This document shows positions 23,653 to 49,127 of a stretch of DNA of 64,000 nt, piece by piece. Numbering within the stretch: the stretch's first letter is position 1; every line of letters starts with the position of its first letter. The notes under the pieces were generated by a model. The model worked only from the letters and a program-made list of their open reading frames with translations. It had not been told where the DNA came from and searched no databases. The DNA is taken from positions 1 through 64,000 of the IMG/VR virus record IMGVR_UViG_3300036781_000418; one strand, written 5' to 3'. The position numbers were made by a program, and so were the translations under genes.

Positions 23653-24690
23653 TTAAGTTGAAGCGCGCGTGAACATGTTGAACATCTGCTTGGTCACGCC
23701 GATCTTGCGCATGGCCTGCTGAATCTGCTCATAGGACTCGTAGTCCTCGCGGAAACCGTCGAGCTTGTTCAGGAAGTTCATGAACTTCGTCATACCAGCT
23801 CCACCGCCACCACCAAGGAAAAAGTCCTCAACAGCGCGCTGGCCGACGTTGGCACCGAGTTCGGCCAGCTTTGGCATGACGACGTCGCGGATCTTCTCAC
23901 GTGCGAGCTGATGGACGTCCTTCTTCATCTCTTCCAGCTCAAAGCTTTCAGCCATCGTGCTGTCCGACTTTTCAGCTGGAGCTGACGAAGCGCCGATCTC
24001 ACCAGCACCAACGAACACGGTGTTCAAGTCGGCTTGATCTTCATCGTTGGCGACCATCACCAAGACGTCGTCCTTCTTCATGAAGGTAAAGCCCTTGTAC
24101 GAACGGACCTTCTCAAAGTCGGCTTCCTTGAAGTCCTTCATCTCTGGCGCGCTTGGGTTGCGAACGCCGAGCTTACGCATGATGCGGGTGTATTCAGGCT
24201 TGAAGCTGTTGACCGCGTAGGTGTAGACCTTGTCCTGTGGAACCTTCCAGCCCATGATGCGGAGCGCGGAACGGAACAGGTTAACGACTTCAGGGAAATC
24301 GTTGATCGAGCTGGCTTCTTCGATGTCCGTTAGCAGGGCGCGACGAGCGTGGCGGAAGCCTTCGTTCAGCTTACCTTCGTCCATGTTGCCAACCCAATCG
24401 CGTTCAGCACTGCGGCCGGACGCGGCTTGCGAACGCATCGTCATGGAACCACGTTCCATTGGATCGAAGCCACCGTTCTTCTCGTCCTGTTCGGCCTTCT
24501 TGGCGGCGCTCCACTTCTTGTCGAGCTTTTTCTTCGCGTCTTCGCGCTTCTTCTTCAACGCTTCTCGTTCAGCACGAAGCTTCTCGATCTTGTCGTTGTT
24601 CTTGAACATACCGAAGATCTCATTGAGCTCCTCTTCGGTCGTTGCCTCAGCCATGATGCGGTTGTAGGTCTTGAATGACAGTTTTGACAT
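23653..24690 (-). CDS. putative internal head protein
   Basis: MSKLSFKTYNRIMAE leader; several L/MxE sites (LNE, MAE, LEE); TAAATA at 24717-24722 on minus. Confidence 0.65.
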   Translation of the reverse strand: MSKLSFKTYNRIMAEATTEEELNEIFGMFKNNDKIEKLRAEREALKKKREDAKKKLDKKWSAAKKAEQDEKNGGFDPMERGSMTMRSQAASGRSAERDWVGNMDEGKLNEGFRHARRALLTDIEEASSINDFPEVVNLFRSALRIMGWKVPQDKVYTYAVNSFKPEYTRIMRKLGVRNPSAPEMKDFKEADFEKVRSYKGFTFMKKDDVLVMVANDEDQADLNTVFVGAGEIGASSAPAEKSDSTMAESFELEEMKKDVHQLAREKIRDVVMPKLAELGANVGQRAVEDFFLGGGGGAGMTKFMNFLNKLDGFREDYESYEQIQQAMRKIGVTKQMFNMFTRAST

Positions 24691-24750
24691 GGTGCAAGGT
24701 TGCAGATGTGATTGCTTATTTAGCATGACTCGCAGCTGAACCAGCATTTT

Positions 24751-24780
24751 GGATGCCAAGACCAGCCCGGCAGCTACAAT
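24751..24780 (+). promoter_or_regulatory. putative middle promoter GGATGC-N18-TACAAT
   Basis: Same motif and spacing at 29157, 32511 and 38077. Confidence 0.65.
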
Positions 24781-24808
24781 CAACGTTGAAATACACATAA
24801 GGTCGTCT

Positions 24809-25408
24809 ATGATCATTGGAATTAGTGGCCCGCAGGGCAGTGGCAAGACCACCGTCCTCGCCGCCCTGGAACAACGAGGTTGGAAGCTGGATCCCTACAA
24901 GGCGTCCCGCCAGGTTCAAGCTCAGCTCGAGGTGTTGAACTTGCTCGACGCCATCAAGACCCCCGAGGGCATGAAGATGTTCCAAGGGCTGGTGTTGGAG
25001 CAAAAGTGCCGGAACCTTGAGCTCATGCAACGCCAGCTGCAGGACGGTGAGCACCTCCTGACCGAACGCAGCTTCGCCGACATCGCGGCCTACGCCCAGC
25101 TCTGGTCGTTTGAGCTGGTGGACCAGCGGCGCTGGTCGTTCAGCGAGGCCATGGCGTTCAACATCGAGTTCTCGATGCGGTGCTACACGATGCAGGAAAA
25201 GTGGTTCGACCGCGTGATTCACCTGCCACGCATGCCGCACATCGTCGAGGAGAACGATCCACACCGGGCGCCAGCCAAGATGGTGGACTTCATCGACGAG
25301 CAGCTCCAGTCCTTCTACAAGCTGCAGGACCGCACCGCCACGCGCGTCATCTCGGCCCTCACGGTGGAAGACCGTGCCGACCAAATCGAATACTTCATCA
25401 ACCTCTGA
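24809..25408 (+). CDS. P-loop nucleoside/nucleotide kinase-like protein
   Basis: MIIGISGPQGSGKTT; ERS..D motif of dNMP kinase/AAA_28-type proteins. Confidence 0.75.
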   Translation: MIIGISGPQGSGKTTVLAALEQRGWKLDPYKASRQVQAQLEVLNLLDAIKTPEGMKMFQGLVLEQKCRNLELMQRQLQDGEHLLTERSFADIAAYAQLWSFELVDQRRWSFSEAMAFNIEFSMRCYTMQEKWFDRVIHLPRMPHIVEENDPHRAPAKMVDFIDEQLQSFYKLQDRTATRVISALTVEDRADQIEYFINL

Positions 25409-25410
25409 TC

Positions 25411-26031
25411 ATGGCCTACACCAAAACCTACTCCAAGTTCCATCCCGGTAAGTACGGACTGCTGATCGACTGGGAGACGACCGGCGCTGAGTTTGGCACA
25501 GACAGCTCCAAGCGTTTCCAAGGCATCGCCTTCGGGGCGATCATCTTCAACACCTCGACCTTCGAGGAAGTCGAGTCCATCTACCGTGAGGTCCAATACG
25601 ACGCCACGAAGTACGAGTGGACCGAGACCGCGGAGAAGATCCACGGCCTGTCGCGTGAGCACTTGGCCGCGAACGGCGTCACCCGTGAACAGGCCTGCGT
25701 CGACCTCTTCACGCTGATCCTCAAGTACATCGGGGCTGGCAACAAGGTGCTGTTGGCCGGCCACAACTGCGGCTTTGACGCGGACTTCACCAACCAGCTC
25801 GCGACGGACCATGGCATCGACCTGGTGCTTCACCACGTGATGCTGGACTCGTCGAGCCTCGCGTTCGCCCTTATCACGGAGTACAAGTCGGACGTCGTGT
25901 TCGAGCTGCTGGGCGGCATCGACAAGCGTGGCTTGCACAACGCCCTTGAGGACGCTCGTGCCTCGCTCGCCGTCTTCCGCAACGCGCGCCAGATCTTCGA
26001 GAAGGGCCTGTTCGCCGAGGTGAAGTCATGA
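25411..26031 (+). CDS. DEDDh 3'-5' exonuclease (DnaQ-like)
   Basis: DWETTG, HN..FD, HNALEDA. Confidence 0.9.
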   Translation: MAYTKTYSKFHPGKYGLLIDWETTGAEFGTDSSKRFQGIAFGAIIFNTSTFEEVESIYREVQYDATKYEWTETAEKIHGLSREHLAANGVTREQACVDLFTLILKYIGAGNKVLLAGHNCGFDADFTNQLATDHGIDLVLHHVMLDSSSLAFALITEYKSDVVFELLGGIDKRGLHNALEDARASLAVFRNARQIFEKGLFAEVKS

Positions 26032-26348: not shown

Positions 26349-26354
26349 GCTTAC

Positions 26355-26838: not shown

Positions 26839-26840
26839 AG

Positions 26841-29146: not shown

Positions 29147-29156
29147 CCAAGTGTTG

Positions 29157-29186
29157 GGATGCATAACACGGCCACAAGCCTACAAT
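29157..29186 (+). promoter_or_regulatory. putative middle promoter GGATGC-N18-TACAAT
   Basis: Recurrent motif. Confidence 0.65.
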
Positions 29187-29212
29187 AACATACTCATCTC
29201 ATAGGAGCATAA

Positions 29213-29560: not shown

Positions 29561-29579
29561 GCAACGTCACACAACACCC

Positions 29580-29613: not shown

Positions 29614-32502
29614 ATGCAAAAATCCTACATTGGCATCGCCAATGACTACCGCAGCGACCAGCTGATGGTGTGGGAACGGCCAGTTGCCGGTGGTCCACGC
29701 ACCTTGCGGTACGTCAAGCCACCCCGCTACTTCTACGTTCCAGACGAAGACGGACAGTACACCTCGATCTTCCGTCAGAAGTTGTCACGCCTTGACTTCG
29801 ACTCCAAGGACGAGTTCGACTACGCCAAGCGTCGCTACTCCCAGCGCTACGAGTCTGACATTCAGCCGCTCTACAAGTGCTTGATGAACGAGTACTACGG
29901 AGTGCCAACTCCGCAGATCAACTTCGCGCTGTTCGACATTGAAGTCGACTATGACTCGAAGCTGGGCTTTAGCTCCCACGACAACCCCTACGCACCGATC
30001 AACGCGATCACGATCTACCAGTCGTGGACGAAGGAGTACATCACCGTCGTCGTGCCACCAAAGGGCTGGGACCGTGACGTGCCAAAGCTGCTGGCTGAGA
30101 TCAAGAAGGTCGCTGACGACGCGGGCATGAAGGACCGTCCAGCACCGATCATCGCCTACAACGAGCGGGAGTTGATCGACGTCTTCCTCGACGCGATCGA
30201 AGAGGCGGACATCATCTCTGGTTGGAACTCGGACTTCTTCGACATCCCATACATCGTGCAGCGCTTGATGCGCCTGTTCGGTGATCAAGGCCACTCCAAA
30301 CTCTGCTTCCCAGGCGCCCCACGCCCACGCTCAAACGTGGTGCAGCGCTTTGGCTCGCCGTCCACCACCTACACGCTCTACGGTCGCACCCACCTCGACT
30401 ACCTGCAGCTCTTCCAGAAGTTTACCTTCGAAGGCCGCACGTCCTACGCGCTGGGCAACATCCTTCAAGAGGAAGTTGGACTCGGTAAGATCGACTACGA
30501 GGGTACCCTCGAGCAGCTGTACAACAACGACTTCGCCCGCTTTACGGTGTACAACTTCCGAGATGTCTCGGGCATGGTTGATCTCGACGCGAAGTTCAAG
30601 TTCATCCAACTGGTCAACCAGATGGCGCACGAGAACACGTGCCAGTTCATGAACATTCTGGGTACCGTTCGCTACGTCGAGACGGGCATCATGAACTTCG
30701 CCCACCACGTGCACCAGCTCATCTGCCCTGACAAGTTCATCTCCAGCGAGAAGAACCGCAAGGTGGAAGGTGCGGTTGTACTGTCGCCTCAGAAGGGCCT
30801 GCACAAGTGGCTTGGTTCAGTGGACATCAACTCACTGTACCCATCGGTCATTCGCGCCCTCAACATGTCGGTCGAGACGTTCGTTGGACAGTTCCAAGGT
30901 GAGGACCTTGACTGGATCGCGTTGTTCGACGACCGTGAACGCAAGCGCAACGTCACCAAGCACTTCAAGCAGTTTGGTACCCTGCACAACGTTCGCTACC
31001 GCTCACCTGAGGACATGCTGGAACGGCGTGCTAAGTCCTACTCGATGTACCACGCCGACGGCTCCACCACGACCAAGACATGGTTTGAATGGCGTGACTG
31101 GTTGAAGGACAACAAGTATTCGGTGTCGGCCTTCGGCACGGTGTTCAACCAAGAGCATGTTGGCATGGTCGCCGGGGTGCTGACCTTCTGGTACGGCGAA
31201 CGTAAGCGTCTCCAAGCCGAGAAGAAGAAGTGGGGCAAGATTGTCAAGGATCTTAGCGCTGAGTATTCCGAATATGTAGCCAAGCACAGTGGCGGATCAT
31301 ATGGTGATAGTGATGAGCTTCACGAGCGAATCAAAAACGCAACGGCTGAAGCGGAAAAGATCTATGGTTCAGATTTGAACCATGCCAAACGACAGGAGGA
31401 GCACTTCGACCTGCTTCAGCTGACGAAGAAGATCCAGTTGAACTCAACCTACGGCGCCCTCCTTAACGAGGCCTTCCTCTTCGGTCGTCGAGAGATTGGT
31501 GCGTCGGTTACCGCCACTGGCCGTGAAATCACGCTCTTCATGAACGAGCAGATCGGTACCGCCGCAACTGGAGAGGCGGCTGAGATCGAGAAGTACATGG
31601 CGATCGAGACCGACGATGAAGGCTACCCCGAAGTCGTCAACATCTACATCTCAGCGTGTGACGCCAACATCGCGGCCGACACGGACTCCGCGTACTTCAA
31701 GACCTACGCTGAGAACAAGGAGGACGCGGTTGCGATCGCCGATCACCTGGCCGACCACGTCAACGAGATGTTCCCTGGCTTCATGGAGAAGTTTTTCAAC
31801 ACCCAAGGTGATCGCTCCAAGCTGATCGTCGGCGGACGTGAGATCGTGGGTAAGAGTGGCCTCTTCATGGACGTCAAGAAGAAGTACACCATCAAGGTGG
31901 TGGACAAGGAAGGCAAGGCGGTTGATGAGTTGAAGTCCATGGGCTCTGAGCTCAAGAAGGCCGACACCCCGAAGGTCGTGCAGAACTTCCTCAAGGCGCT
32001 GATGGAGCTTGTGCTGGACAGTGAACCTTACCCAACCATCGAGAAGTTCGTCAACGACAACCGCATCGGCTTGATCAAGAAAAACTCCGAGATTCTGGCG
32101 CTGGGCACGGCCAAGCAGGTGAACAACCTCGACTCCAAGTACGCGGAGTGGGAACGAGTTGAGAAGCCAAAGAAGGGTAAGGTCAACTTGCCTGGCCACG
32201 TTCGAGCGGCCATCAACTACAACGAGCTCGTCAAGCAGTTCGAGGAAGGCGCGAAGCAGATCCAGACTGGTGACAAGGTCGTGATCTTCTACGTGAAGAT
32301 GAACCAGTTCAACATCAAGTCCATTGGGTTTCCGTCGGACAAGATGCACGTTCCAGAATGGTTCACTGAAAACTTCCAAGTGGACATGGCCTTGACCGAG
32401 GAAAAGCTGATCGACGCCAAGCTGGCCGGCATCTTCAACGCCCTCGACTGGGAGGTGCCGACCCTTCAGCGTTCGTACCTTTCAGCGTCCTTCGACTTCT
32501 AG
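29614..32502 (+). CDS. family B DNA polymerase (gp43-like)
   Basis: Exo FDIE, WN..FD, YN..D; motif A DINSLYPS; motif B KIQLNSTYG; motif C DTDS. Confidence 0.97.
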   Translation: MQKSYIGIANDYRSDQLMVWERPVAGGPRTLRYVKPPRYFYVPDEDGQYTSIFRQKLSRLDFDSKDEFDYAKRRYSQRYESDIQPLYKCLMNEYYGVPTPQINFALFDIEVDYDSKLGFSSHDNPYAPINAITIYQSWTKEYITVVVPPKGWDRDVPKLLAEIKKVADDAGMKDRPAPIIAYNERELIDVFLDAIEEADIISGWNSDFFDIPYIVQRLMRLFGDQGHSKLCFPGAPRPRSNVVQRFGSPSTTYTLYGRTHLDYLQLFQKFTFEGRTSYALGNILQEEVGLGKIDYEGTLEQLYNNDFARFTVYNFRDVSGMVDLDAKFKFIQLVNQMAHENTCQFMNILGTVRYVETGIMNFAHHVHQLICPDKFISSEKNRKVEGAVVLSPQKGLHKWLGSVDINSLYPSVIRALNMSVETFVGQFQGEDLDWIALFDDRERKRNVTKHFKQFGTLHNVRYRSPEDMLERRAKSYSMYHADGSTTTKTWFEWRDWLKDNKYSVSAFGTVFNQEHVGMVAGVLTFWYGERKRLQAEKKKWGKIVKDLSAEYSEYVAKHSGGSYGDSDELHERIKNATAEAEKIYGSDLNHAKRQEEHFDLLQLTKKIQLNSTYGALLNEAFLFGRREIGASVTATGREITLFMNEQIGTAATGEAAEIEKYMAIETDDEGYPEVVNIYISACDANIAADTDSAYFKTYAENKEDAVAIADHLADHVNEMFPGFMEKFFNTQGDRSKLIVGGREIVGKSGLFMDVKKKYTIKVVDKEGKAVDELKSMGSELKKADTPKVVQNFLKALMELVLDSEPYPTIEKFVNDNRIGLIKKNSEILALGTAKQVNNLDSKYAEWERVEKPKKGKVNLPGHVRAAINYNELVKQFEEGAKQIQTGDKVVIFYVKMNQFNIKSIGFPSDKMHVPEWFTENFQVDMALTEEKLIDAKLAGIFNALDWEVPTLQRSYLSASFDF

Positions 32503-35070: not shown

Positions 35071-35306
35071 AGCTGCTGAAAGCTGAGACCATCTTCGACA
35101 ACGATACGTTTGAACCGCGCCACCGACTGACGGTGGAAGTTAGTCAGACGTTCATCGACGATGTGCAGTTGTACGAAGGACTGCGGACCGACATAGCCCA
35201 GGTGATTGGACTTCGGTTTATGGAGCTAATCGATCAGCTGATAACGGCCAACGCTGCGCTTTCTAAACTGAACCCTTCGGTGCAGCTTGGCGAAGCGCAG
35301 CCTTAG
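35067..35306 (+). CDS. hypothetical protein
   Basis: GTGA overlap. Confidence 0.5.
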   Translation: MKLLKAETIFDNDTFEPRHRLTVEVSQTFIDDVQLYEGLRTDIAQVIGLRFMELIDQLITANAALSKLNPSVQLGEAQP

Positions 35307-35793
35307 TCGCCCTAGCCTTCATCTCAGGCACCTTGTCGTCGAGGAACTTAGCGACCTCGACGGCGTCGATGATCCGAACCTTAGTTGGCTTGGAGACGCC
35401 GTTAGCGTAGAAGATGTTCCAACCACCCTGCCTAAACTCCATCTCAACGCTGACCCTTACGGCCTCCGCTTTTGGTACGTCCCAGAACGCGAAGATGTGG
35501 TGTGACGCATAGCTGGTCTTAAGGGCCTGGCCATTGTCCACGGTCAAGCCAAGCTTTTCCAGCTTCTTCATGAACAGGTGCTGGTCAACGTCCAGGTCTT
35601 CTGGCTCATGGGCGCCGGTAACTCGGCTTACGACGCCGTCAATCTGTGCGGCTGATAGAATGTCCGACAAGATATCGGCCAACTTGTCCTGTACTTGCTT
35701 AGGATCGTCCACCTGGGCGAAGGCGTCGTGTAGGGCCTTAAGCTTGTTAGTTTTGCTGTCGACTGAGGCCTCGAAAAGGTGCTGGATATGCAT
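35263..35793 (-). CDS. putative internal head protein
   Basis: MHIQHLFEA leader; TAAATA at 35817-35822 on minus. Confidence 0.65.
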   Translation of the reverse strand: MHIQHLFEASVDSKTNKLKALHDAFAQVDDPKQVQDKLADILSDILSAAQIDGVVSRVTGAHEPEDLDVDQHLFMKKLEKLGLTVDNGQALKTSYASHHIFAFWDVPKAEAVRVSVEMEFRQGGWNIFYANGVSKPTKVRIIDAVEVAKFLDDKVPEMKARATKAALRQAAPKGSV

Positions 35794-35816: not shown

Positions 35817-35841
35817 TATTTATGGCCGGCCTCGCTAAATA
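35817..35841. promoter_or_regulatory. divergent late promoters
   Basis: TATTTA at 35817-35822 and TAAATA at 35836-35841. Confidence 0.65.
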
Positions 35842-36816: not shown

Positions 36817-37449
36817 ATGCGGCGCATCCTACTTGCGTTGACGGTCGTTCTGTCCTCGTCAGCTTTCCTAATCAACTACGCCTTCTCGGAGATGCCTCAG
36901 GCCAAGGGCACGGTCGTCATCGGCGAGAAGCCCACCTACATCAAAGGCAACCAAGCGGTCACCCTCCTGCCGACCGACCTCAACATGAGCCAGGCCCAGC
37001 TCCTCAGCAAGGCCTATGAGATCGCGAAGGCCGACGGCCACAAGGATCCAGAGCTCGTGCAGGGCATTATCCTTCAGGAGTCTGAGGCGGGTCGGGCCAC
37101 GGCCTACCGCGTTGCAGGCTCGAAGTCGGAGCCGTACTACGGCGTCGGTCAAGTGAAGCTGGACGCGACGCGTGACGTCATGTCGGCCTACCCAGCCATG
37201 TGGACGAAGTACCGCTTCCAAACGAAGACGGACGATGAGCTCAAGGCCTACTTGATCTTGAACAACGTCTTCAACATGGAGGTGACGTCCAAGTACCTCC
37301 GCATCTTGGAAGTTCGCTACGGCCTCTCTGGTCGCGACCTGCTGAACGCCTACCAGAAGGGGCCAGGTGGCTACAAGGAAGTTGACCCTGATGAGTACCA
37401 CTACGCCCGTGGGGTTGAGGACAAGCTGGCAAGGATGAAGCGTCGATGA
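36817..37449 (+). CDS. lytic transglycosylase (SLT-like) with N-terminal signal/anchor
   Basis: QES catalytic motif, GVGQV, AYQKG, Y..V; hydrophobic N-terminus. Confidence 0.8.
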   Translation: MRRILLALTVVLSSSAFLINYAFSEMPQAKGTVVIGEKPTYIKGNQAVTLLPTDLNMSQAQLLSKAYEIAKADGHKDPELVQGIILQESEAGRATAYRVAGSKSEPYYGVGQVKLDATRDVMSAYPAMWTKYRFQTKTDDELKAYLILNNVFNMEVTSKYLRILEVRYGLSGRDLLNAYQKGPGGYKEVDPDEYHYARGVEDKLARMKRR

Positions 37450-37988
37450 TGAAGAATATCGTGCTACCGCAGATCAAACGCGTCGTGCCATCCACCGTGG
37501 TGATGACGAACGTTGGTGTGCAACCAATGTCGGCACCAAGTGGGATACTACCAATGCTTAGGTACAATTTCACTCCCAACGTTGTCACTGTTGACATTGC
37601 GCGACCAACTATCATGTTGATCACGCATGACCAGTATATGGAGTTAAGATGTAAGAATAGCGTCGTTGACACTTGCGTAGCTCGCTCATGGCCAGTTGAC
37701 GCAATTATGGCATGGCTCCAGTCAAACATCGATCCAGAAGGCTCAATCATCATCCATGTCAATCAGCTTAGCTTGATTGTCTCATCTGGTATTTGGTCTG
37801 GTATACTAAAAGGGCGGGCTTACTTGTATAGCCTAGGGCAAGATAAAGGATTGTCCTTTCACTTTAACGGCATGATCGCTTTGGTTGGGTTAGATGAACT
37901 TACGCCTGTTAAACAGCGGGCCGCATTCTCGCGACTTCGGTTGATCGCGCCCAAGACGCAAATCATCCCCGGCAAGTACAAGCTCTAA
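37446..37988 (+). CDS. hypothetical protein with N-terminal major-capsid (Gol-like) segment
   Basis: IKRVVP..VGVQPMSAPSG..LR matches the T4 gp23 RRAIP..GVQPMNSPTG..LR segment; remainder unrelated and more AT-rich. Confidence 0.65.
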   Translation: MMKNIVLPQIKRVVPSTVVMTNVGVQPMSAPSGILPMLRYNFTPNVVTVDIARPTIMLITHDQYMELRCKNSVVDTCVARSWPVDAIMAWLQSNIDPEGSIIIHVNQLSLIVSSGIWSGILKGRAYLYSLGQDKGLSFHFNGMIALVGLDELTPVKQRAAFSRLRLIAPKTQIIPGKYKL

Positions 37989-41719: not shown

Positions 41720-41725
41720 GGATCC

Positions 41726-43783
41726 TTACTTGTACTGGGTTTGCGATGCGAGCACCGTGTAGGTGGCCGACGCGGTCTTGATAATCGTGAACGAATACGA
41801 GTCGATACCGCTTGCGTTACCAGCACTTGGCGCGACACCACCAATCCACTTTGGCGTCACGGCGGAACCGTCCACTTGGTAGGCTGAAGCGTAGAACGGC
41901 GAAGCACCGTTGGTGATCAACATAGCGACCGAGACTGACTCACCGACTGCGAGGGCCGTGTTCATCGACGTACCGCTGGACCATGCAAAGTTGACCGTGA
42001 AGTTGGCCGTTGCGTTGGACGTGTAGTACTGGACGGCACCTGACGCGGCGTAGAATGTCTGTGTCGTGGACGGTGCCGATCCAACGACCGACACGACTTC
42101 CGTAGCGTTGGTCAAGTGGGCGGCCGGAGCGGAGGTTGTACCAGCCAGCGTGGTGGAACCAAGGGTAGCCGTGCTGGTTGTCGTCAGCGTGCTGAAGCGA
42201 CCAGTCGAAGCCGTGGTAGCGCCGATTGGCGTGTTGTCGATCGACGTAGCGGATACGGCACCGGTGAGGGTGATGGTCGTGCCAGTCAAGGCGATCGTCG
42301 TACCAGCCAGCGTGATGGTCGTCGCTGTGTTACCAGTGCGAGCCACCGTGAGCCAGTCGGCGTTCGAGGAGATCGCGTCGTTCTGGAGCGTGAAGTGGAT
42401 CGTACCACCAGAGCCAACGTAGATTTCCGAGGTCTTCAGGTCAGTGCCAACGGCACTGTTGATGAGACGGACGATTGGGAAGGAGTTGGTGTCAATACCC
42501 GCGTAGGTACCCGTAGTTCCAGCGCTTGAGACCAAGCTCGTGCCGTTCAGCGACGTGACGGACAGGCTCTGCCAAGTAGCTGAGGTGCCGTCCGTGATCA
42601 GGGCCTTGGTGGCGTTGGTGGCTTGCGATGGGAGGATCGCGGTCAGGGCGGCGGCCGCGGAAGTCGCGCCAGTACCACCGTTGGCGAGGGCCAACGTGCC
42701 AGCCAGCGTGATCGTGCCGGAGGTCGTGATTGGAGAACCCGTAACCGTCAGACCAGTCGTACCACCGGAGAAGGCGACCGAAGTCACGCCACCACCAGCG
42801 GAGGAGACCTGCGAGAACGTCAGGCTGGTCGTGCCGACGGTGATCGCGCCAGAGGTGATGAGCACCCAGCCAGTTCCACCGTTCAAGGTACCAGATTGGA
42901 CGTACACGAAGTCACCGGATGAGACTTCGTTCGATGGGTTGCCGTCGAAGTCGGCGGCTCGTGCCCAAGCGCCAGCAGCCGAAACGTAAACGCCGTTCTG
43001 CGAGCCAGTCGATTGGTTCTTGACCAGCACGCGTGAGCCGCTGGTGAGAACACCGTCGATGGTTTGTTCACCTGACAGGGTCAGGTTGGCGGTCGATGCA
43101 ACGTTGACGGACGGCTTTGGGGTGAGACCAGCGGCGACCGCGTCAACGTACTGCTTGGTGGCGACTTGAAGGTTGCCAGTTGGGTCAGCGGAGACCGAGA
43201 CAGTACCAGCCAACGCAATGGCCGTGCCAGTCAGGGTAATAGTGGTAGCCGTCGTGCCGGTACGAGCGACCGAGAGCCAGTCGACGTTGGACGAGATGGC
43301 GTCGTCTTGCAGAGTCCAGTGAATCGTGCCGTTGTTACCGACGTAGACTTCAGACGTCTTAGCGTTTGAGCCGGCTGACGAGTTCAGGAACCGCGTGATT
43401 GGGAAACTGTTTGAGTCCAAACCAACGTAAACACCAGTCGTGCCTGAGCTGGAGACCAGCGCGGTGGCCGAGAGGCTAGTTGGGGTGCCAGCCACTGTGG
43501 ACCAGACACCGTCACCACGCCAATAGGTAGAGCTGGACGCGTTGGTGCCGCTGTTCAGGTGGGACACGTCCAAGTTGCCGGTGGCCGTTGAAAGGTCGAC
43601 TGAGCCACTACCACCAGACTGTGACCAGGTGGATCCGTTGTAGGAGTAGAGACCTTCAGGCGCTGCGTCGGTGCGGTAGAACAGTTCGCCGACGGATGGA
43701 TTCGATGGGAAAGCCGTACCGTTCGCCACGGTAAGGTTGGTTACGACAGACCCTTCGAGGAGGGTTAGACCGTCTGAATGCAT
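41726..43783 (-). CDS. tail fibre protein
   Basis: ATKQYVD, RVLVKNQ..NGVY domain; ~90-aa internal duplication; TAAATA at 43811-43816 on minus. Confidence 0.85.
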   Translation of the reverse strand: MHSDGLTLLEGSVVTNLTVANGTAFPSNPSVGELFYRTDAAPEGLYSYNGSTWSQSGGSGSVDLSTATGNLDVSHLNSGTNASSSTYWRGDGVWSTVAGTPTSLSATALVSSSGTTGVYVGLDSNSFPITRFLNSSAGSNAKTSEVYVGNNGTIHWTLQDDAISSNVDWLSVARTGTTATTITLTGTAIALAGTVSVSADPTGNLQVATKQYVDAVAAGLTPKPSVNVASTANLTLSGEQTIDGVLTSGSRVLVKNQSTGSQNGVYVSAAGAWARAADFDGNPSNEVSSGDFVYVQSGTLNGGTGWVLITSGAITVGTTSLTFSQVSSAGGGVTSVAFSGGTTGLTVTGSPITTSGTITLAGTLALANGGTGATSAAAALTAILPSQATNATKALITDGTSATWQSLSVTSLNGTSLVSSAGTTGTYAGIDTNSFPIVRLINSAVGTDLKTSEIYVGSGGTIHFTLQNDAISSNADWLTVARTGNTATTITLAGTTIALTGTTITLTGAVSATSIDNTPIGATTASTGRFSTLTTTSTATLGSTTLAGTTSAPAAHLTNATEVVSVVGSAPSTTQTFYAASGAVQYYTSNATANFTVNFAWSSGTSMNTALAVGESVSVAMLITNGASPFYASAYQVDGSAVTPKWIGGVAPSAGNASGIDSYSFTIIKTASATYTVLASQTQYK

Positions 43784-43899
43784 GAGTGAAGCTCCTTATG
43801 ATAGAGGAACTATTTAGACCTCTGACCTGGAAATGGATCGTTTGTTACCGCTTTGAGCTCGCTAAATATCAGCATCTTCCACTCATATTGAGATCACAC

Positions 43900-44142: not shown

Positions 44143-44169
44143 GTCATCGACGCTTAGGCGGTCGACATA

Positions 44170-44195
44170 AATAGGACACTTGCGTGTCCTATTTT
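44170..44195 (+). terminator. terminator, followed by late promoter at 44198-44203
   Basis: AATAGGACAC-TTGC-GTGTCCTATTTT. Confidence 0.7.
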
Positions 44196-44207
44196 GGTAA
44201 ATAGCGA

Positions 44208-46487
44208 ATGACTATCCTCCGCCGCCTTAACGAAGGCATCGATCACGTCGACGATCTCCCAGTCGACCAGTTCATCCAGATCATCTCGACCCTGAAGGAC
44301 ATGCGTCTTTCGGAGAAGCTGGACGGCTCAAACCTGTGGGCGGGCGTCGACGATCAAGGGAAGGTGTTCATCTCCCGTGAGGGTAAGCGGAACAACGCCA
44401 AGCGGATGTACGCGCCAGAAGACTGGGCGAAGGTCGGCAACAACAACCAGTTCATCGCCGCCACGGCCGCCATCATCAACCAGCAAGCTATCTTTACCCA
44501 GTGCCTGAAGCCTGGTCAAATGGTCGAGCTTGAAGTCCTGTACGGCAACCAACCGAACACCGTCGTCTACAACAACGCGTTCAACTTGATCGCCGTGTTG
44601 CGTGGCGTCGAGGACACACCGTTGGGCGTCGCCACCTCGCTGGCCGCGGCCCTGAAGGACAAGACGGCCGACGTTAGCGTCAACCTCGTCTCCAGCGACG
44701 ACGGTGAAAACCTGAAGATGGTCCTGACGGACGCGAAGTTCCAGTTCATCACCCCGAAGACGTTCGACGCCAAGAAGCTCGAGCACGGTAAGCTGAACGC
44801 CGAGGTCAAGAAGTTGCAGGACTTTGCCGCCAAGAAGTCCACCATTGCTGGGTACACGAACGCCGAGCTCGCCGCGGTCAACCTCAACAAGGTCCCGAAG
44901 GAAGAGCGCGACGCCGCCAAGTCGGCCCGTCAAGAGCTGCTTGACACCTTCCAGTCCGACTTCATCCAGCCAATCAAGGCCCTCCTGCTCGACACCTTCA
45001 TCGGTGGTAGCCGTGACGGCGCCGAAGGTGTCGTCATCTCCAACCCCAACGATGGCTCCCAGTTGAAGCTGGTGGACAAGGAGAAGTTCACCCAGCGTAA
45101 CGTGGAAGTCCAGCAGGAACGTGCGAACCTGCAAGGCGCCGTGATGACGACCGACCAGAACGCTGACCTAGCAGCCCGTGGCGGCCTGATGGGTGAGCTG
45201 AAGATTATGTTGGCCGAGCTGCTGGGCAACCGCAACATGGCCCGCGGCGCCGAGTTGAACAAGGTGCTGGCCTCGTTGAAGGCACAAGACGTCCCAGCCG
45301 CCGTCCAGAAGCTGGCGGACCAGCTCCAAGTCGACGACTACCTAGCGATCCGCAACAAGGCGATTGCCTTGACGTCCGCCACACAGGACAAAGTCGCGGC
45401 CGCCCTGAAGGAGTTCAAGGGTCAAGTCCAGGCTGACACGACTGGCAAGAAGCTTGGTCAGGACAACGTCAAGCGGACGTTGGTCACCTACGCTGAAGTC
45501 AACAACCGCCTGAAGTCGTTGGTCGCCAAGCTCAAGGGTGCGGAGGACATGCGTGGCATGGTCAACGCGATCTACGGCCCAGCGATCACCACGTACTTCG
45601 AGAAGCGGATTGAAGCACAGCAGGCGAACGAGGCGCTCACCGAGAACAAGGGTGAGCAGGACATGATCAACCTCAAGAACCTGACACCGTTCATCGTGAT
45701 CAACTGCTACCTTGCCACCCTGTTCATGACGATCATCTGCATCAAGGAACAGGACAAGCTGGCGATGCGCAAGATCGCGGACCGTTCGAACTTCAGGCTC
45801 AAGGACTTCTCCCACAACATGTCGCCGCTGAACTTCTGGGGCTACATCTTCTGGCGGGCCTCGAAGGCGGACGTCAAGAAGACGCTCGGCAAGGAGACCT
45901 CGGCGAAGCTGCACACGATCACGAAGAACATCCCAGTGATCTGGTGGCGGACCATGCACCAACAGCTGGCCCAACACAGCCAGCTGAAGTTGGACGTTCC
46001 AACCACCCAGCGAATGTTCAAGCTGATCCTTGAATACTCGGGAATGAGGACCGCCCGTGTAAATAGACTGATCAATGGGGTGCTGAGCTGGGATGATCAG
46101 GACTTCGATCAGAAGGTTGAGCTGCTCAACGACATGTACCTGTACGGTCAACAGTTCCTCCCAACCTCATACCTCTACAAGCGTGTTCGAATCATCCAGT
46201 CGAACATGCTGCTCAATGCAAACGGAGTAAACGACATGGTGGTCACCGAAGGACGGCTGTTGAAGCGCCTGATTGGACTGACTGAAGACGGTGAAGGCGA
46301 CGGCATGGCTGGGGCCGAACCCTCTGGTCAGCCAGCCGGCATGACGGCGACGACGGACATCGCGCCGCTCGCGATGCCACTCGGCACGACCGTCCACGTG
46401 GTCAAACGCAAGCGCAACCCTAACATCAAGCGCCTCAAGTTCAAGTACAAGGATCCAACCCAGAATGAAACTCCTAAAAACGATTAA
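44208..46487 (+). CDS. putative virion protein with an RNA-ligase-like nucleotidyltransferase domain
   Basis: EKLDGSN (motif I), SR, ELE, EGVVI (IV), LKLVDK..F (V); LNE/LTE sites; late promoter. Confidence 0.65.
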   Translation: MTILRRLNEGIDHVDDLPVDQFIQIISTLKDMRLSEKLDGSNLWAGVDDQGKVFISREGKRNNAKRMYAPEDWAKVGNNNQFIAATAAIINQQAIFTQCLKPGQMVELEVLYGNQPNTVVYNNAFNLIAVLRGVEDTPLGVATSLAAALKDKTADVSVNLVSSDDGENLKMVLTDAKFQFITPKTFDAKKLEHGKLNAEVKKLQDFAAKKSTIAGYTNAELAAVNLNKVPKEERDAAKSARQELLDTFQSDFIQPIKALLLDTFIGGSRDGAEGVVISNPNDGSQLKLVDKEKFTQRNVEVQQERANLQGAVMTTDQNADLAARGGLMGELKIMLAELLGNRNMARGAELNKVLASLKAQDVPAAVQKLADQLQVDDYLAIRNKAIALTSATQDKVAAALKEFKGQVQADTTGKKLGQDNVKRTLVTYAEVNNRLKSLVAKLKGAEDMRGMVNAIYGPAITTYFEKRIEAQQANEALTENKGEQDMINLKNLTPFIVINCYLATLFMTIICIKEQDKLAMRKIADRSNFRLKDFSHNMSPLNFWGYIFWRASKADVKKTLGKETSAKLHTITKNIPVIWWRTMHQQLAQHSQLKLDVPTTQRMFKLILEYSGMRTARVNRLINGVLSWDDQDFDQKVELLNDMYLYGQQFLPTSYLYKRVRIIQSNMLLNANGVNDMVVTEGRLLKRLIGLTEDGEGDGMAGAEPSGQPAGMTATTDIAPLAMPLGTTVHVVKRKRNPNIKRLKFKYKDPTQNETPKND

Positions 46488-47901
46488 CGAGTTTGTAGGC
46501 GACGCTCAGTCCAACCTGAAGACTAGCGACGGTAACGACGCCGGGCAGACCGACGTCAAGAGCTACAACGTCTCGTTCAACATGCTCCGCAACACCATCA
46601 ACCAAGGTGACGGTGAGAACGTCCAAGCTTCAGACGTGAACAACTACCTTGAGCGTGCCCATGAGATCAACAACGAAGTTGACACCGTGGAGTATGGTCT
46701 CGAGACGGACGACGGCCGCATCATCAAGATTTGGGTGAACGCGGCGGACGCCACGGCCTTCCAAGACGAGATGCAGCACCTGCTCGGCGTGGAGAATGAC
46801 ATTGAGGAGGCGATCAACACGCTGGCCTCGAAGTTCGACATCGTCGACGTGGTCTGGCCAGACGCCAACCAAGCGACCGCCGACGTGCCGGACGCTGAAG
46901 CAACCGACGACCTTGGAGTCACGGACGACCTAGACGCCGTCGGCGACGACGACCGAGACGGTGCGACCCTGGCTAAGGCCGCCCTTGATAAGATCAACGG
47001 CAAGTCCAGTGACGACAAAGACGATGACGACGAACCAACCAACGAAACAAAGGCCCCAATGAGCATCGGTAGCGACTTCTTCAAACGCGTCATGCAGGAG
47101 GCCGATGAGGCTGACGTTGACGGCATCAACGACGGCTTGAACATCAAGCTCGACCCACGTCAACGTTCGATCATGCTGCGCCTACGTCGTGCGATCGACC
47201 GCAAGATCCTCGCCTTGTTCGCCATGATTGGTGTTCCAGGCCGCTACATGGACGTCGAGGGTATCGACGGCCTGATCAAGGAAGCGGGCCTGAAGCTGCG
47301 TGCCTCACCAACCCAGCAGGCCGCGTTCAACTCCTTCTACACGGCCTTGGGCAACGCCCGCGGCTTTGGAACTGCGCCTGACGCCGAGACGGTCGCCGAA
47401 GCCGGTGAAGAGAACCTGAAGGGTGCCTACATCCAGAAGATGCTTGAGGGCATCGCGGTCCACCTTGGTCTGCCAGAGTCGCTCGTCGTCTCGGGCGGTC
47501 CACAGCAAGTCTCCCTCGCCTTCTACAACTGCGCCAAGCTGATTGAAGACGACGGCGCGTTGGAAGCCGCGATGCGCAAGTTGGCCCAACGGTTGAAGGT
47601 CTCCTCGTCCGCTGAAAAGCCGGCCGAGAAGGTCGCTGAAGACGTGAACACCGGTGGTGACCCGTTCCTGGCGGCCGTGGTTACGTTGGTGGAGGCCCTT
47701 GGTATCCCAGAAGCCAACCTCAACTACCAGCGCTCGAACGTGCTCAACAGCCTGCGCGCCCTTAAGCTCAGCTTGAACAACCGCTCGATGATCCAGCAAC
47801 GGATGGCGGCCCTCAGCACGCTGATCGCGGCCAACGTCAAGCAAACCGCTGGACAGCCAGCGGATACGACCGACACCGCTGGAACTGCTGGCACCGCCTA
47901 A
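46465..47901 (+). CDS. putative internal head protein
   Basis: MKLLKTINE leader; acidic linkers with TNE, MQE and VAE sites. Confidence 0.65.
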   Translation: MKLLKTINEFVGDAQSNLKTSDGNDAGQTDVKSYNVSFNMLRNTINQGDGENVQASDVNNYLERAHEINNEVDTVEYGLETDDGRIIKIWVNAADATAFQDEMQHLLGVENDIEEAINTLASKFDIVDVVWPDANQATADVPDAEATDDLGVTDDLDAVGDDDRDGATLAKAALDKINGKSSDDKDDDDEPTNETKAPMSIGSDFFKRVMQEADEADVDGINDGLNIKLDPRQRSIMLRLRRAIDRKILALFAMIGVPGRYMDVEGIDGLIKEAGLKLRASPTQQAAFNSFYTALGNARGFGTAPDAETVAEAGEENLKGAYIQKMLEGIAVHLGLPESLVVSGGPQQVSLAFYNCAKLIEDDGALEAAMRKLAQRLKVSSSAEKPAEKVAEDVNTGGDPFLAAVVTLVEALGIPEANLNYQRSNVLNSLRALKLSLNNRSMIQQRMAALSTLIAANVKQTAGQPADTTDTAGTAGTA

Positions 47902-47918
47902 CACGTCGTGCTCACACG

Positions 47919-47940
47919 CAAGGGACCTACGGGTCCCTTG
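47919..47940 (+). terminator. terminator
   Basis: CAAGGGACC-TACG-GGTCCCTTG plus TTT. Confidence 0.8.
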
Positions 47941-47979
47941 TTTCGTTTGCGCAGCCGGCATGGCTACATACAATCAACC

Positions 47980-48660
47980 ATGTCACAGTTCAACTACCAA
48001 CCGATCGAGGCCGTCACCCACCCCACCTCGGGAGTTCGGCTCTACAAGACCCCAGACGGCGACTTTCCCAGCATCACCACGATGCTCGGTCAGACTATGC
48101 CACCCGACAAGGCGGCGGTGCTGCAACGTTGGCGCGACTCCATTGGGCATGAGGAGGCGGACGCCCACTCGAAGCGAGCCACGGACCATGGCACGATGGT
48201 GCACACGTGTGTCGAACGGTTCCTACTTGGTACGCCTATTGACGCCCCAGTCGACGGTGAGCCGGTGCCACCTCGTGCCCTCGAGTCGGTACAGAGCCTC
48301 AAGCTGAAGCTCAAGAAGATCAGCCTCATCTACGGTCAGGAGCAGGCGGTCTGGTCGAAGACCCTCAAGCTGGCCGGTCGGTTTGACTGCATGGGCGTCT
48401 ACGACGGTGTTCCGTCAATCATCGACTTCAAGACGTCGGGTCGCATGAAGACACGTGAGGACATTGCGGACTACGAACTGCAGCTCGCCTTCTACGCGAT
48501 CGCCCACAACGAGCTGTTCGGCACCGACGTTCGAAACGGCGTCATCCTCATGTCGGTGGACGGTGGCTTCCCGCTTGAGTTCAGGGTGGCGCTTTTTGAG
48601 GGCGACATCATCAACCGCCTCCTGGCGCGCACCCTTCAGCACCATGCTTTGTTCCGGTAG
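47980..48660 (+). CDS. PD-(D/E)xK exonuclease (Cas4/RecB-like phage exonuclease)
   Basis: PSITT.L, GT.VH...E, AGRFD, IIDFKTS, QL..Y. Confidence 0.9.
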   Translation: MSQFNYQPIEAVTHPTSGVRLYKTPDGDFPSITTMLGQTMPPDKAAVLQRWRDSIGHEEADAHSKRATDHGTMVHTCVERFLLGTPIDAPVDGEPVPPRALESVQSLKLKLKKISLIYGQEQAVWSKTLKLAGRFDCMGVYDGVPSIIDFKTSGRMKTREDIADYELQLAFYAIAHNELFGTDVRNGVILMSVDGGFPLEFRVALFEGDIINRLLARTLQHHALFR

Positions 48661-48692
48661 GCTAAATAAGCGGTAAGTCTCTGGAGTCTTTA

Positions 48693-49127
48693 ATGGACCA
48701 ACTGAACGAATTTAACAGCGTGCTCTCCGTGATGTCCGCACCGGCGATGGCCCTTGGCAGTGCCGTGGCAGATTTGCAGGGTAGGCTGGCTACGGCTGAC
48801 GCGTCGACCCCGTACGTCGCACCGGTCCAACAGGACGCGCCACCAGCCCCGCCACAACCGAAGTACAAGAACATCTACGTGTCCCCAGCGTGCTTTGAGC
48901 AGGCCTCCAACACGCCTGACGGCATGACGGTGTTCAACCTCGTCTTCGACGTGTCCTACACCGACGAGAACGACAGCTACAAGCGCTTCAAGGTCGCCAA
49001 GCAGATCTCCATCTGCCCTGACAAGCTGGCCTGCGAAGCCTCACAAACCCAACCTATCCAGGTCATTGAAAACAAGAGCGAGATCGACGCCATGACGGCG
49101 CGCCTGGTCTTCCTCGGAGGAAAGTAA
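48693..49127 (+). CDS. hypothetical late protein
   Basis: TAAATA at 48663; GGAG RBS; QLNE leader. Confidence 0.7.
   Translation: MDQLNEFNSVLSVMSAPAMALGSAVADLQGRLATADASTPYVAPVQQDAPPAPPQPKYKNIYVSPACFEQASNTPDGMTVFNLVFDVSYTDENDSYKRFKVAKQISICPDKLACEASQTQPIQVIENKSEIDAMTARLVFLGGK

What the first reader, a model, noticed from the sequence alone, without database searches (positions are those of the whole stretch)
23653..49127. The same Glu-terminated leader marks dispersed stand-alone late genes
Seen: 23653..24690(-) starts MSKLSFKTYNRIMAE, 35263..35793(-) MHIQHLFE, 44208 MTILRRLNE, 46465 MKLLKTINE and 48693 MDQLNE. All except 46465 have their own upstream TAAATA; 46465 is coupled to 44208. The two minus-strand genes sit singly, against the orientation of the surrounding early/replication genes. 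The longer ones contain further LNE/LTE/MAE/VAE sites in acidic linkers. Inference: a portable 'late promoter + targeting leader' cassette recruits unrelated cargo into the head, and the long ones are processed as polyproteins.
Basis: partly seen in the sequence, partly recalled or inferred. Interest (0 to 1): 0.6.

Follow-up and report, generated by a model that had tools for sequence, protein, structure and literature searches.

The report
Head-targeting leader peptides in a jumbo phage
The five genes belong to a much larger set of late genes in this 343-kb soil phage. Their proteins start with a short tag ending in Leu/Ile-x-Glu, the cut site of the T4-type head protease, so they are very probably loaded into the capsid like T4's internal proteins, on about ten times T4's scale.

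Summary
TAAATA occurs 26 times in the window against 2.8 expected, and it peaks about 30 nt upstream of start codons.

Genome-wide (342,591 bp, uncultivated jumbo myophage), 37 of 455 genes start M-[KR]-[LIFV]-x(1-3)-[LIFM]-x-E, against 0.56 expected. Of these, 29 lie in TAAATA-led units, against 118 of 418 other genes. They fall into about 26 unrelated families.

The phage encodes a T4 gp21-type prohead protease, whose known specificity is L/I-x-E. In 39 of 53 relatives of the 44208 protein, which has an RNA-ligase-like fold, L/I-x-E sits immediately before the conserved mature N-terminus. Eight relatives lack the leader and start exactly at that point.

The modules of 44208 and 46465 are fused or split differently in relatives, and the h-x-E junction is always kept. 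In the cultured relative RsoM2USA, the 44208 homologue and three other leader proteins are among ten reported virion bands.

This is a T4-like capsid-targeting and processing system, greatly expanded. The "promoter + leader cassette" idea is not supported at the DNA level. Cleavage and packaging are inferred for this phage, not shown.

The parts
24717..24722 (-). TAAATA late-promoter box of the 23653-24690 gene, 32 nt before the ATG
23653..24690 (-). Stand-alone late gene, 345 aa. It carries the long 'class B' leader MSKLSFKTYNRIMAE (codons 24646-24690), followed by acid-rich ...ELNE. Internal KLNE (res 108-110) and TMAE (res 246-248) are kept in its only homologue. Cargo function is unknown.
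23603..23622 (-). Terminator-like hairpin plus T-run, 30 nt after the stop of the 23653 gene. It closes a one-gene transcription unit.
35817..35822 (-). TAAATA box 29 nt before ATG 35793
35263..35793 (-). Stand-alone late gene, 176 aa, with leader MHIQHLFE (codons 35770-35793). It has the same HLFE ending as the array genes at 11444 and 11876. No homologue was found.
44168..44203 (+). Two TAAATA boxes (44168-44173 and 44198-44203) before 44208. The first forms part of a hairpin (TAAATAGGACAC...GTGTCCTATTTT) that looks like the terminator of the gene upstream.
44208..46487 (+). 759-aa multi-module late protein.
- Leader: residues 1-9 (44208-44234).
- Module A: residues 10-479, RNA/DNA-ligase-like nucleotidyltransferase with invariant K37-x-D39-G40.
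- Conserved site ALTE: residues 476-479 (L-T-E codons, residues 477-479, at nt 45636-45644).
- Module B: residues 480-693.
- Conserved site GLTE: residues 690-693 (L-T-E codons, residues 691-693, at nt 46278-46286).
- Basic C-terminal tail.
46465..47901 (+). 478-aa acidic late protein that overlaps 44208 by 23 nt. Leader is MKLLKTINE (46465-46491). It contains an internal leader-like peptide, MSIGSDFFKRVMQE, at residues 199-212 (47059-47100). That peptide is the N-terminus of a separate gene in 7 related contigs. In 20 relatives the N-module is fused to the ligase module with the h-x-E junction kept.
48663..48668 (+). TAAATA box 30 nt before ATG 48693
48693..49127 (+). 144-aa late protein with short leader MDQLNE (48693-48710). 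Nine homologues keep x-[N/D]-E followed by F/M, but P3 is often Thr. This is the weakest member.
11027..13658 (+). Not in the finding's range but the same system. TAAATA at 11027-11032 is followed by a five-gene late operon. The leaders are MKLLQDLIGE (11060), MRVVHLFE (11444), MKLNHLFE (11876), MKLNSILE (12244) and MKLDHLLE (12666).

Best explanation
The five genes are scattered members of a genome-wide class of late genes. There are 37 strict members and about 55 by excess count, roughly a tenth of all genes.

Their products carry a short N-terminal propeptide. The common form is M-K-L-x-x-L-[L/F]-E. A longer T4-like form is M..SFK.Y...[LIM]-x-E. Both end in the L/I-x-Glu site of the phage's own T4 gp21-type prohead protease.

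Proposed mechanism, by analogy with T4 internal proteins and Alt:
1. Late transcription from TAAATA promoters makes the proteins together with the head proteins.
2. The leader binds them into the scaffold core of the assembling prohead.
3. The protease then cuts after the Glu and, in the long proteins, at conserved h-x-E linkers between modules.
4. The mature cargo stays in the head with the DNA and is probably ejected into the next host.

Cargo includes an RNA/DNA-ligase-like enzyme (44208), an amidoligase, a P-loop ATPase and many small proteins of unknown function.

Shown: the motif and its statistics, the link to the promoter, the protease gene, the exact leader/mature boundary in homologues, module fusion and fission at these sites, and virion presence of homologues in RsoM2USA.

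Inferred: targeting, cleavage and ejection in this phage.
For: (1) Strict leader in 37/455 genes against 0.56 expected. The Glu peaks at residue 8.

(2) TAAATA is 9-fold over-represented and centred 30 nt before starts, including those of portal, protease, scaffold, tail-fibre and baseplate genes. Leader genes lie in TAAATA units 29/37 against 118/418, p 2e-9.

(3) A Peptidase_S77 (gp21) protease is at 129743-130354, E 5e-26. A Gp23 capsid protein is at 131661-132947. The putative scaffold gene (PHROG family of unknown function; role assigned from its position between protease and capsid genes and its site density) has 5 [LIM]-x-E per 100 aa against 1.15 genome-wide. Leader genes follow directly after the capsid gene. 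T4 gp21 cuts after L/I-x-E, and a 10-residue CTS suffices for packaging (PMC9026906; PMC3012670).

(4) The signal acts at the peptide level. All Leu codons are used, and third-position identity is 45% against 77% at second positions.

(5) The leader sits on 26 BLAST-unrelated families.

(6) In 53 non-redundant homologues of 44208, 39 have L (31) or I (8)-x-E immediately before the conserved G/S-I-x-H. Eight start with Met exactly at that boundary. In the AlphaFold2 model the leader residues 1-9 are disordered, while the rest has mean pLDDT 89.

(7) Modules are fused or split in relatives, with h-x-E kept at each junction.

(8) RsoM2USA virion bands include ORF438 (the 44208 homologue), ORF89, ORF132 and ORF257. 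All four have such leaders.

(9) The same leader is enriched at first-Met positions in 74 related contigs, odds ratio 11, p 1e-14.
Against: - There is no direct evidence in this phage. It is a metagenome assembly, only one soil DNA run holds it, and there is no RNA.
- The RsoM2USA assignments come from ten gel bands and are worded 'most likely correspond'.
- In the more distant PA5oct, a loose leader pattern is no more frequent among 53 MS-detected virion proteins than among 52 others (11 against 12). Its 44208 homologue is not flagged as a virion protein.
- The mature parts are not basic like T4 IPs. Median pI is 5.7, and the 20 residues after the leader are acid-rich.
- Packing some 40-60 different proteins would be a heavy load.
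- The loose motif alone is expected in about 9% of genes, so MDQLNE and MTILRRLNE are not convincing by themselves.
- The protease-leader co-fold gave no answer.
Confidence: 0.72

Rival explanations
1. The shared N-terminus is only inherited. On this view the genes are diverged paralogues of one large family, and MKLxxLxE is the first helix of their common fold, with no signal function.
For: Many carriers are small proteins (median 157 aa) in tandem arrays. BLAST joins some of them into groups of 6, 4, 3, 2 and 2. Several share an acidic stretch followed by a hydrophobic helix after the leader.
Against: - The leader also heads an RNA-ligase-like enzyme, an amidoligase and a P-loop ATPase.
- There are 26 BLAST clusters.
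- In the AlphaFold2 model of 44208 the leader is disordered and lies outside the fold.
- Eight homologues lack it and start exactly at the boundary.
- The same peptide occurs internally at module junctions in fused homologues.
Confidence: 0.08
2. The motif serves translation or mRNA function (a favourable Lys second codon, a downstream box, coupling in operons) and not the fate of the protein.
For: Lys is the commonest second residue genome-wide (89/455). Many leader genes have no Shine-Dalgarno match and overlap the gene before them.
Against: - Synonymous codons vary freely at the conserved Leu and Glu positions.
- The conserved feature is Leu/Ile at -3 and Glu at -1 of a protein boundary (39/39).
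- The motif is kept inside long ORFs, where no initiation is needed.
Confidence: 0.04
3. The leader is a protease-removed propeptide, but its role is to keep the cargo inactive or to time its activation. Entry into the head would then be directed by other parts of each protein, or the site is cut by another Glu-specific protease outside the head.
For: - The L/I-x-E site by itself needs only three positions.
- In T4, targeting and processing determinants are separable (residues 4 and 7 against 8 and 10; PMC9026906).
- Some relatives carry ...YLDD... in place of ...YL.E before the ligase module. In T4 an Asp at that place blocks cutting but not targeting.
Against: - K2, L3 and the hydrophobic residue at position 7 are conserved beyond what the cut site needs.
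- T4 gp21 is a component of the prohead core and carries out its cleavages during prohead maturation (PMC9026906; that it acts only there is an inference), so a conserved site implies presence there.
- Leader proteins are found in RsoM2USA virions.
Confidence: 0.14

Closest known systems
T4 capsid targeting sequence (CTS) of internal proteins IPI/IPII/IPIII and Alt, removed by prohead protease gp21
   Same: - A short N-terminal propeptide (T4: 10-19 residues; CTS MKTYQEFIAE is printed in PMC8442874).
- It ends in L/I-x-E and is shared by otherwise unrelated late proteins.
- A gp21-family protease is encoded next to the scaffold and capsid genes.
- The late promoter is of the (TA)TAAATA type.
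- Alt is also cut at both ends (PMC9026906).
- The long-form leader here (M..SFK.Y..[LIM]-x-E) and RsoM2USA's MKTFKQFL.E resemble the T4 CTS in sequence.
   Different: - Scale: 37 to about 55 genes against four or five in T4.
- The commonest leader is an 8-mer, MKLxxL[LF]E.
- Cargo is mostly neutral or acidic with an acid-rich stretch after the leader, not small and basic.
- Cargo includes multi-module proteins with internal leader-like junctions that are separate genes in relatives.
- Nothing has been tested experimentally here.
Head and ejection proteins of phiKZ, 201phi2-1 and SPN3US, processed by gp175/gp245 (diverged gp21 homologues)
   Same: These are giant phages with more than 50 head proteins. 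Many are cut after Glu in a short motif. Propeptides carry redundant sites. Much of the cargo is ejected into the host (PMC9026906, PMC7411985, PMC10052503).
   Different: - The motif there is S/A/G-x-E, and propeptides are long and varied, not a uniform 8-residue N-terminal tag.
- Those phages are a different lineage from this T4-core, XacN1/RsoM2USA-like lineage.
ATP-dependent RNA ligases (T4 Rnl1/Rnl2, Naegleria RNA ligase, Trl1 ligase domain)
   Same: - Module A of 44208 has an invariant K-x-D-G and further invariant E-G and K-x-x-D positions across 33 homologues.
- Its model aligns with these ligases over 170-200 residues at Z about 9, rmsd 3.4-4.0.
- Two homologues carry a PF09414 hit.
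   Different: - The protein itself has no Pfam hit, and identity to the ligases is 12-14%.
- It has a long helical C-terminal half, a head-targeting leader and a basic tail.
- No substrate is known.
- T4 Rnl1 is made early and is not known as a head protein (from my own knowledge).
Ralstonia phage RsoM2USA ORF438, ORF437 and ORF88-90
   Same: - Direct homologues in the same order: ligase-like ORF438, then acidic ORF437.
- The leaders are MLTFKQYAQPILTE|GISH and MTKFLQSLLE.
- ORF438 and ORF89 are reported virion proteins.
   Different: - Identity is 30%, and ORF438 lacks module B.
- That genome is 42% GC against 57% here.
- Its commonest N-terminal form is a 5-mer, MKLxE (37 of 298 genes).
- The authors did not describe leaders or processing.

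Membership tests
T4-type CTS / gp21-processed head cargo | Phage encodes a gp21-family (Peptidase_S77) prohead protease in a T4-like head module | tested here: met
   PF03420 hit at 129743-130354, E 5.3e-26, above the cut-off. The order is portal, protease, putative scaffold, Gp23 capsid protein.
T4-type CTS / gp21-processed head cargo | N-terminal propeptide of about 7-19 residues ending in L/I-x-E | tested here: met
   The five leaders are 6-15 residues long and end in L/I/M-x-E. Genome-wide, the Glu peaks at residue 8. P3 is L or I in 39/39 homologues of 44208.
T4-type CTS / gp21-processed head cargo | The same leader on proteins otherwise unrelated in sequence | tested here: met
   38 leader genes fall into 26 BLAST clusters. 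Cargo includes ligase-like, amidoligase and P-loop proteins.
T4-type CTS / gp21-processed head cargo | Late expression together with head genes | tested here: inconclusive
   Promoter motif only. TAAATA lies 30 nt upstream, and 29/37 leader genes are in such units. No RNA data exist.
T4-type CTS / gp21-processed head cargo | Cargo physically present in the mature head | not testable with these tools
   Indirect only. The RsoM2USA homologue ORF438 and leader proteins ORF89, ORF132 and ORF257 are reported virion bands.
T4-type CTS / gp21-processed head cargo | Cleavage after the leader Glu by the prohead protease | not testable with these tools
   Comparative support only. The co-fold of protease with a leader gave no answer.
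T4-type CTS / gp21-processed head cargo | Leader sufficient to carry a foreign protein into the head | not testable with these tools
   Needs a fusion experiment in a cultured relative.
T4 internal proteins (IPI-III) in the narrow sense | Small, basic, DNA-associated mature proteins | tested here: not met
   Median mature pI is 5.7. There are 4.1 acidic residues in the 20 after the leader, against 2.4 in the background. No sequence similarity to IPs was found in the PHROG scans.
ATP-dependent RNA/DNA ligase superfamily (module A of 44208) | Motif I K-x-D-G with invariant lysine, plus downstream nucleotidyltransferase motifs | tested here: met
   K37, D39, G40, E273, G274, K287 and D290 are invariant in 33 homologues.
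ATP-dependent RNA/DNA ligase superfamily (module A of 44208) | Adenylyltransferase fold | tested here: met
   Foldseek top hits are all RNA/DNA ligases (prob up to 0.99, E 0.007-0.05). VIA-align gives Z 9.0-9.5 over 170-190 residues. This is moderate strength.
ATP-dependent RNA/DNA ligase superfamily (module A of 44208) | Match to a curated family model | tested here: not met
   No Pfam or PHROG hit for the protein itself. Only two homologues carry PF09414.
Protease-processed polyprotein | Conserved cleavage motifs at module borders, with modules able to exist as separate genes | tested here: met
   Sites 477-479 and 691-693 are kept in 26-28 of 31 homologues. Eleven architectures were seen in 80 loci, with h-x-E at the junctions.

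The most novel reading that the evidence does not exclude
About a tenth of this phage's genes encode a capsid-delivered 'ejectome'. This would be dozens of unrelated proteins and enzymes, including a ready-made RNA-ligase-like repair enzyme, an amidoligase and an ATPase. An 8-residue tag loads them into the head. Some are built as cut-apart multi-module proteins whose modules are freely fused, split and exchanged between related phages, because the head protease separates them anyway. That would be a polyprotein-plus-address-tag strategy in a dsDNA phage, and a way to read a phage's injected protein arsenal directly from sequence.
Probability: 0.4. Interest if true: 0.75.

Novelty: new variant of a known kind. 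Interest (0 to 1): 0.6.

Why it matters
- **Predicting injected proteins.** If the tag works as in T4, one can list from sequence alone the proteins that a whole clade of uncultivated soil jumbo phages carries into the host. More than 80 related contigs were found.
- **Counter-defence candidates.** Injected proteins are the first phage products to meet host defences, so this set is a rich source of candidate counter-defence factors.
- **Module fusion and fission.** The shuffling of modules at protease sites suggests how such arsenals diversify.
- **Packaging tag.** A short defined tag for a large-capsid phage could serve as a protein-packaging tool, as the T4 CTS does.

Tried and rejected
- **Near-identical DNA in the phage collection:** none.
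- **PHROG and Pfam scans of the five proteins:** no family. PDB sequence search of 44208: nothing.
- **Homologue searches:** 24690 has one relative and 35793 has none. Atlas look-ups gave no lead.
- **PA5oct as an independent test.** I transcribed 53 MS-detected and 52 undetected genes from the first 155 kb. A loose leader pattern was equally common in both (11 against 12), so PA5oct neither supports nor refutes. A few head-module proteins there do start MK..h-x-E. I did not fetch the rest of that genome.
- **Co-fold of the prohead protease with the first 45 residues of the 11876 protein:** no answer. This is not evidence either way.
- **Sequencing runs:** one soil metagenome DNA run, probably the source, and no RNA.
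- **RsoM2USA ORF438 band size.** The paper lists 51.69 kDa against 62.4 kDa predicted full length and about 54 kDa for a product cut at both ends. The paper does not make clear how its figure was derived, so I do not count this as evidence.
- **Cassette idea.** I looked for DNA-level conservation from promoter to leader and found none beyond TAAATA itself.
- **Own gene caller.** It mis-set a few starts (24852 for 24690; 11036 for 11060). These were corrected by hand or by rule.

Full report
**What the window is.** The window is the first 64 kb of a single 342,591-bp contig with 57% G+C. It is listed as an IMG/VR virus record with direct terminal repeats and 100% estimated completeness. It is a jumbo myophage. 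It has a family-B DNA polymerase (29614-32502) that is 44% identical to that of Ralstonia phage RsoM2USA and about 32% identical to those of XacN1 and relatives. It also has a DnaB helicase and many tail-fibre-like proteins. No near-identical DNA is in the phage collection. Only one soil metagenome run holds it.

**Checking the observation.**
- My own gene caller first chose GTG 24852 for the first gene. However, the DNA shows TAAATA at 24717-24722(-), 32 nt before ATG 24690, and the upstream part overlaps a plus-strand gene.
- The other boxes are at 35817(-), at 44168 and 44198(+), and at 48663(+).
- Gene 46465 overlaps the end of 44208 by 23 nt.
- Both minus-strand genes are lone minus genes in a plus-strand block that holds replication genes.
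- The 23653 gene ends with a terminator-like hairpin at 23622-23603.
- Further LNE, LTE, MAE and VAE sites in acid-rich stretches are present.

**Is it more than chance?**
- TAAATA occurs 26 times in the window against 2.8 expected from dinucleotide-preserving shuffles.
- Genome-wide, 59 of 111 copies lie 15-45 nt before a called start, with a sharp mode at 30. These starts include those of portal, protease, scaffold, tail-fibre and baseplate-region genes. This behaves as a T4-type late promoter.
- In 455 called genes, the first [LIFM]-x-E ends at residue 8 in 37 genes. Neighbouring and later positions hold about 1-10.
- The strict pattern M-[KR]-[LIFV]-x(1-3)-[LIFM]-x-E occurs at 37 N-termini against 0.56 expected from its internal frequency.
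- A looser pattern gives 93 against 39, an excess of about 54 genes. It also shows that a loose match alone is weak evidence.
- After correcting five starts, 29 of 37 strict-leader genes lie in units headed by TAAATA, against 118 of 418 other genes (odds ratio 9.2, p 2e-9). With a laxer gap rule the counts are 34 of 37.

**The finding is the edge of something larger.** Most leader genes lie in tandem arrays.
- One array is in the window. TAAATA at 11027 is followed by five genes starting MKLLQDLIGE, MRVVHLFE, MKLNHLFE, MKLNSILE and MKLDHLLE.
- Others lie at about 75-78, 84-90, 118-121, 134-137, 209-215, 257-258, 272-275 and 335-338 kb.
- The five genes of the finding are the scattered members.

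**Peptide signal or DNA element?** At the conserved Leu positions all synonymous codons are used. Pairwise identity is 77% at second codon positions and 45% at third positions. The spacers between TAAATA and ATG share nothing beyond an occasional GGAG. In addition, 27 of 37 strict-leader genes have no box of their own. The leader is therefore selected as a peptide, and promoter and leader are independent signals. I find no portable DNA cassette.

**Unrelated cargo.**
- The 38 leader genes (37 of the common form plus the long form of 24690) fall into 26 BLAST clusters. The largest has six members.
- Carriers include an amidoligase (95164-96348) and a P-loop ATPase (90725-92440).
- They also include the 44208 protein. 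Its residues 10-479 have an invariant K-x-D-G and other invariant nucleotidyltransferase positions. The AlphaFold2 model is confident, with mean pLDDT 89. The best structural matches are RNA and DNA ligases.
- In that model the nine leader residues, and the residues just after the ALTE site, are the only disordered parts.

**The protease.**
- The genome encodes a Peptidase_S77 (T4 gp21) prohead protease, flanked by the portal, a putative scaffold gene (a PHROG family of unknown function, assigned here from its position and its site density) and a Gp23-family capsid protein.
- T4 gp21 cuts after L/I-x-E. T4 internal proteins carry 10-19-residue propeptides, and the first ten residues of IPIII suffice to carry foreign proteins into the head. 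The review states that the CTS may be the way T4-like phages load varied proteins (PMC9026906; PMC3012670). The T4 CTS sequence MKTYQEFIAE is printed in PMC8442874.
- Here the putative scaffold gene has 5.0 [LIM]-x-E sites per 100 residues against 1.15 genome-wide. The capsid protein has four such sites in its first 44 residues. Leader genes follow directly after the capsid gene.

**Comparative evidence for the boundary.**
- The 44208 protein has many relatives in metagenomes. Eighty related loci were fetched from IMG/VR, many from contigs of 230-370 kb.
- In 53 non-redundant copies, 39 have Leu (31) or Ile (8), then any residue, then Glu, immediately before the conserved mature start G/S-I-x-H-[IL]-E-D-L. 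The leaders are 5-12 residues long and vary in sequence.
- Eight copies have no leader, and their initiator Met sits directly on the boundary.
- This is what a removable address tag predicts, and it matches the T4 protease rule in 39 of 39 cases.

**Comparative evidence for processing of the long proteins.**
- In 31 full-length homologues of 44208, only the leader site and the sites at 477-479 (ALTE), 679-681 and 691-693 (GLTE) are conserved as hydrophobic-x-E, apart from catalytic residues.
- I split 44208 and 46465 into modules A (ligase-like), B, C (tail), D and E. The 80 loci show eleven arrangements:

| Arrangement | Loci |
|---|---|
| A fused to D | 20 |
| AB / DE, as here | 17 |
| A / D | 11 |
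| ABC / DE | 8 |
| AB / D / E | 6 |
| A / B / D | 5 |
| Five further arrangements | 13 in all |

- At the A-D fusion the junction reads ...SLIKSMNE|DW..., which is the counterpart of the N-terminal MKLLKTINE|F of 46465.
- Module B, when it is a separate gene, starts MNFLATLEE. When fused, it is preceded by ...LL.E|K.
- Module E starts with M-[ST]-I-G-x-x-F-L-x-R-V-L-x-E. This holds both where it is a gene of its own (seven loci) and where it is internal, as in 46465 at residues 199-212.
- Gene borders and internal linkers are therefore interchangeable, and both keep the cut site.

**Evidence from a cultured relative.**
- The RsoM2USA paper reports ten virion gel bands identified by mass spectrometry (PMC8504454).
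- Besides capsid, sheath and two structural proteins, these are ORFs 38, 86, 89, 132, 257 and 438.
- ORF438 is the homologue of 44208 and begins ...MLTFKQYAQPILTE|GISH.
- ORF89 begins MKTFKQFLSE, ORF132 begins MKTFKQFLNTLME and ORF257 begins ...APITE.
- Four of the six non-canonical virion proteins thus carry such leaders. Three carry the T4-like F-K-x-F/Y form, which about ten of 298 genes in the first 200 kb have. This count was made after seeing the data.
- The authors do not mention leaders or processing.
- RsoM2USA ORF88-90 share the C-terminal ...ELIDAGY... ending with the six-member family here.

**Limits.**
- Nothing shows packaging or cleavage in this phage.
- In PA5oct, a distant relative with a 93-protein virion list, my partial test found no enrichment. 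Its 44208 homologue is not flagged as structural.
- The mature parts are not basic, unlike T4 internal proteins.
- The 48693 leader is weak, since its homologues keep the Glu but often have Thr at P3.
- 35793 has no homologue.
- The protease-leader co-fold gave no answer.

**Verdict.**
- The best explanation is a T4-type capsid-targeting and processing system that has expanded to roughly a tenth of the gene set in a clade of soil jumbo phages. It includes multi-module proteins that are cut apart.
- The principle is known from T4. The scale, the leader form and the fusion and fission of modules at protease sites appear undescribed in the papers I could search.
- I rate it a new variant of a known kind.

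Noticed in passing
window 44168-44195; also genome 118102, 160812, 239702, 252885 (+) and 104912 (-): At several sites the TAAATA box is the 5' arm of a G+C-rich hairpin that ends ...CCTATTT(T). An example is TAAATAGGACAC-ttgcg-GTGTCCTATTTT. The late promoter and an apparent terminator of the upstream gene therefore share the same bases.
   Followed up: partly
window 11014-11032, 35817-35841, 43811-43868: Back-to-back TAAATA boxes on opposite strands lie 13-50 nt apart. This suggests divergent late promoters in short intergenic gaps.
   Followed up: no
window 37446-37988 (+): A 180-aa protein has a weak match to the first ~40 positions of the Gp23 capsid model (E 1.7e-4). It also has a BLAST link to the N-terminal part of the real capsid protein at 131661-132947. 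A third such fragment is at 230129. These may be decoys or scaffold-binding pieces copied from the capsid propeptide.
   Followed up: no
window 47980-48660 (+): A PD-(D/E)XK nuclease-family protein (Pfam E 2e-7) without a leader sits between the leader genes 46465 and 48693. It is syntenic in 65 of 80 related loci.
   Followed up: partly
window 51848-53452 (-): A 534-aa protein combines Peptidase_M23 and Glyco_hydro_108 domains. It is a likely virion-associated or lysis peptidoglycan hydrolase. XacN1 virions contain an M23 peptidase (PMC5852040).
   Followed up: no
window 1715-6049, 41726-43783, 55394-57766; genome 278230-284791: This is a family of large tail-fibre-like paralogues. Three of them share a conserved N-terminus (M....L.EG..V.N...A) that mimics the loose leader pattern but is part of the fibre protein.
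   Followed up: no
RsoM2USA, loci L007-L010 (record 1-200000): In RsoM2USA the first hydrophobic-x-E ends at residue 5 in 37 of 298 genes (MKLSE, MKLNE, MKLDE...). These include the long arrays of ~200-aa paralogues at 175-200 kb. This is a still shorter form of the leader, or a different signal.
   Followed up: partly
loci L086, L094, L095 (IMG/VR relatives): Three relatives carry a longer extension before the ligase module, M.SK.FK.YLDDNDYKPT.KS..K. It has Asp where other leaders have the cut-site Glu. In T4, Asp at that position allows targeting but blocks cleavage (PMC9026906).
   Followed up: no
genome 95164-96348 (-) and 90725-92440 (-): An Amidoligase_2-domain protein starts MKLDVLFE and a P-loop ATPase starts MKINFASYLVE. 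Both are candidate packaged enzymes.
   Followed up: partly
window 23603-23622, 23524-23549, 44174-44190: The hairpins in this region repeatedly use the same loop and closing pairs (..CC-TTGC-GG..). This may be a shared terminator design.
   Followed up: no
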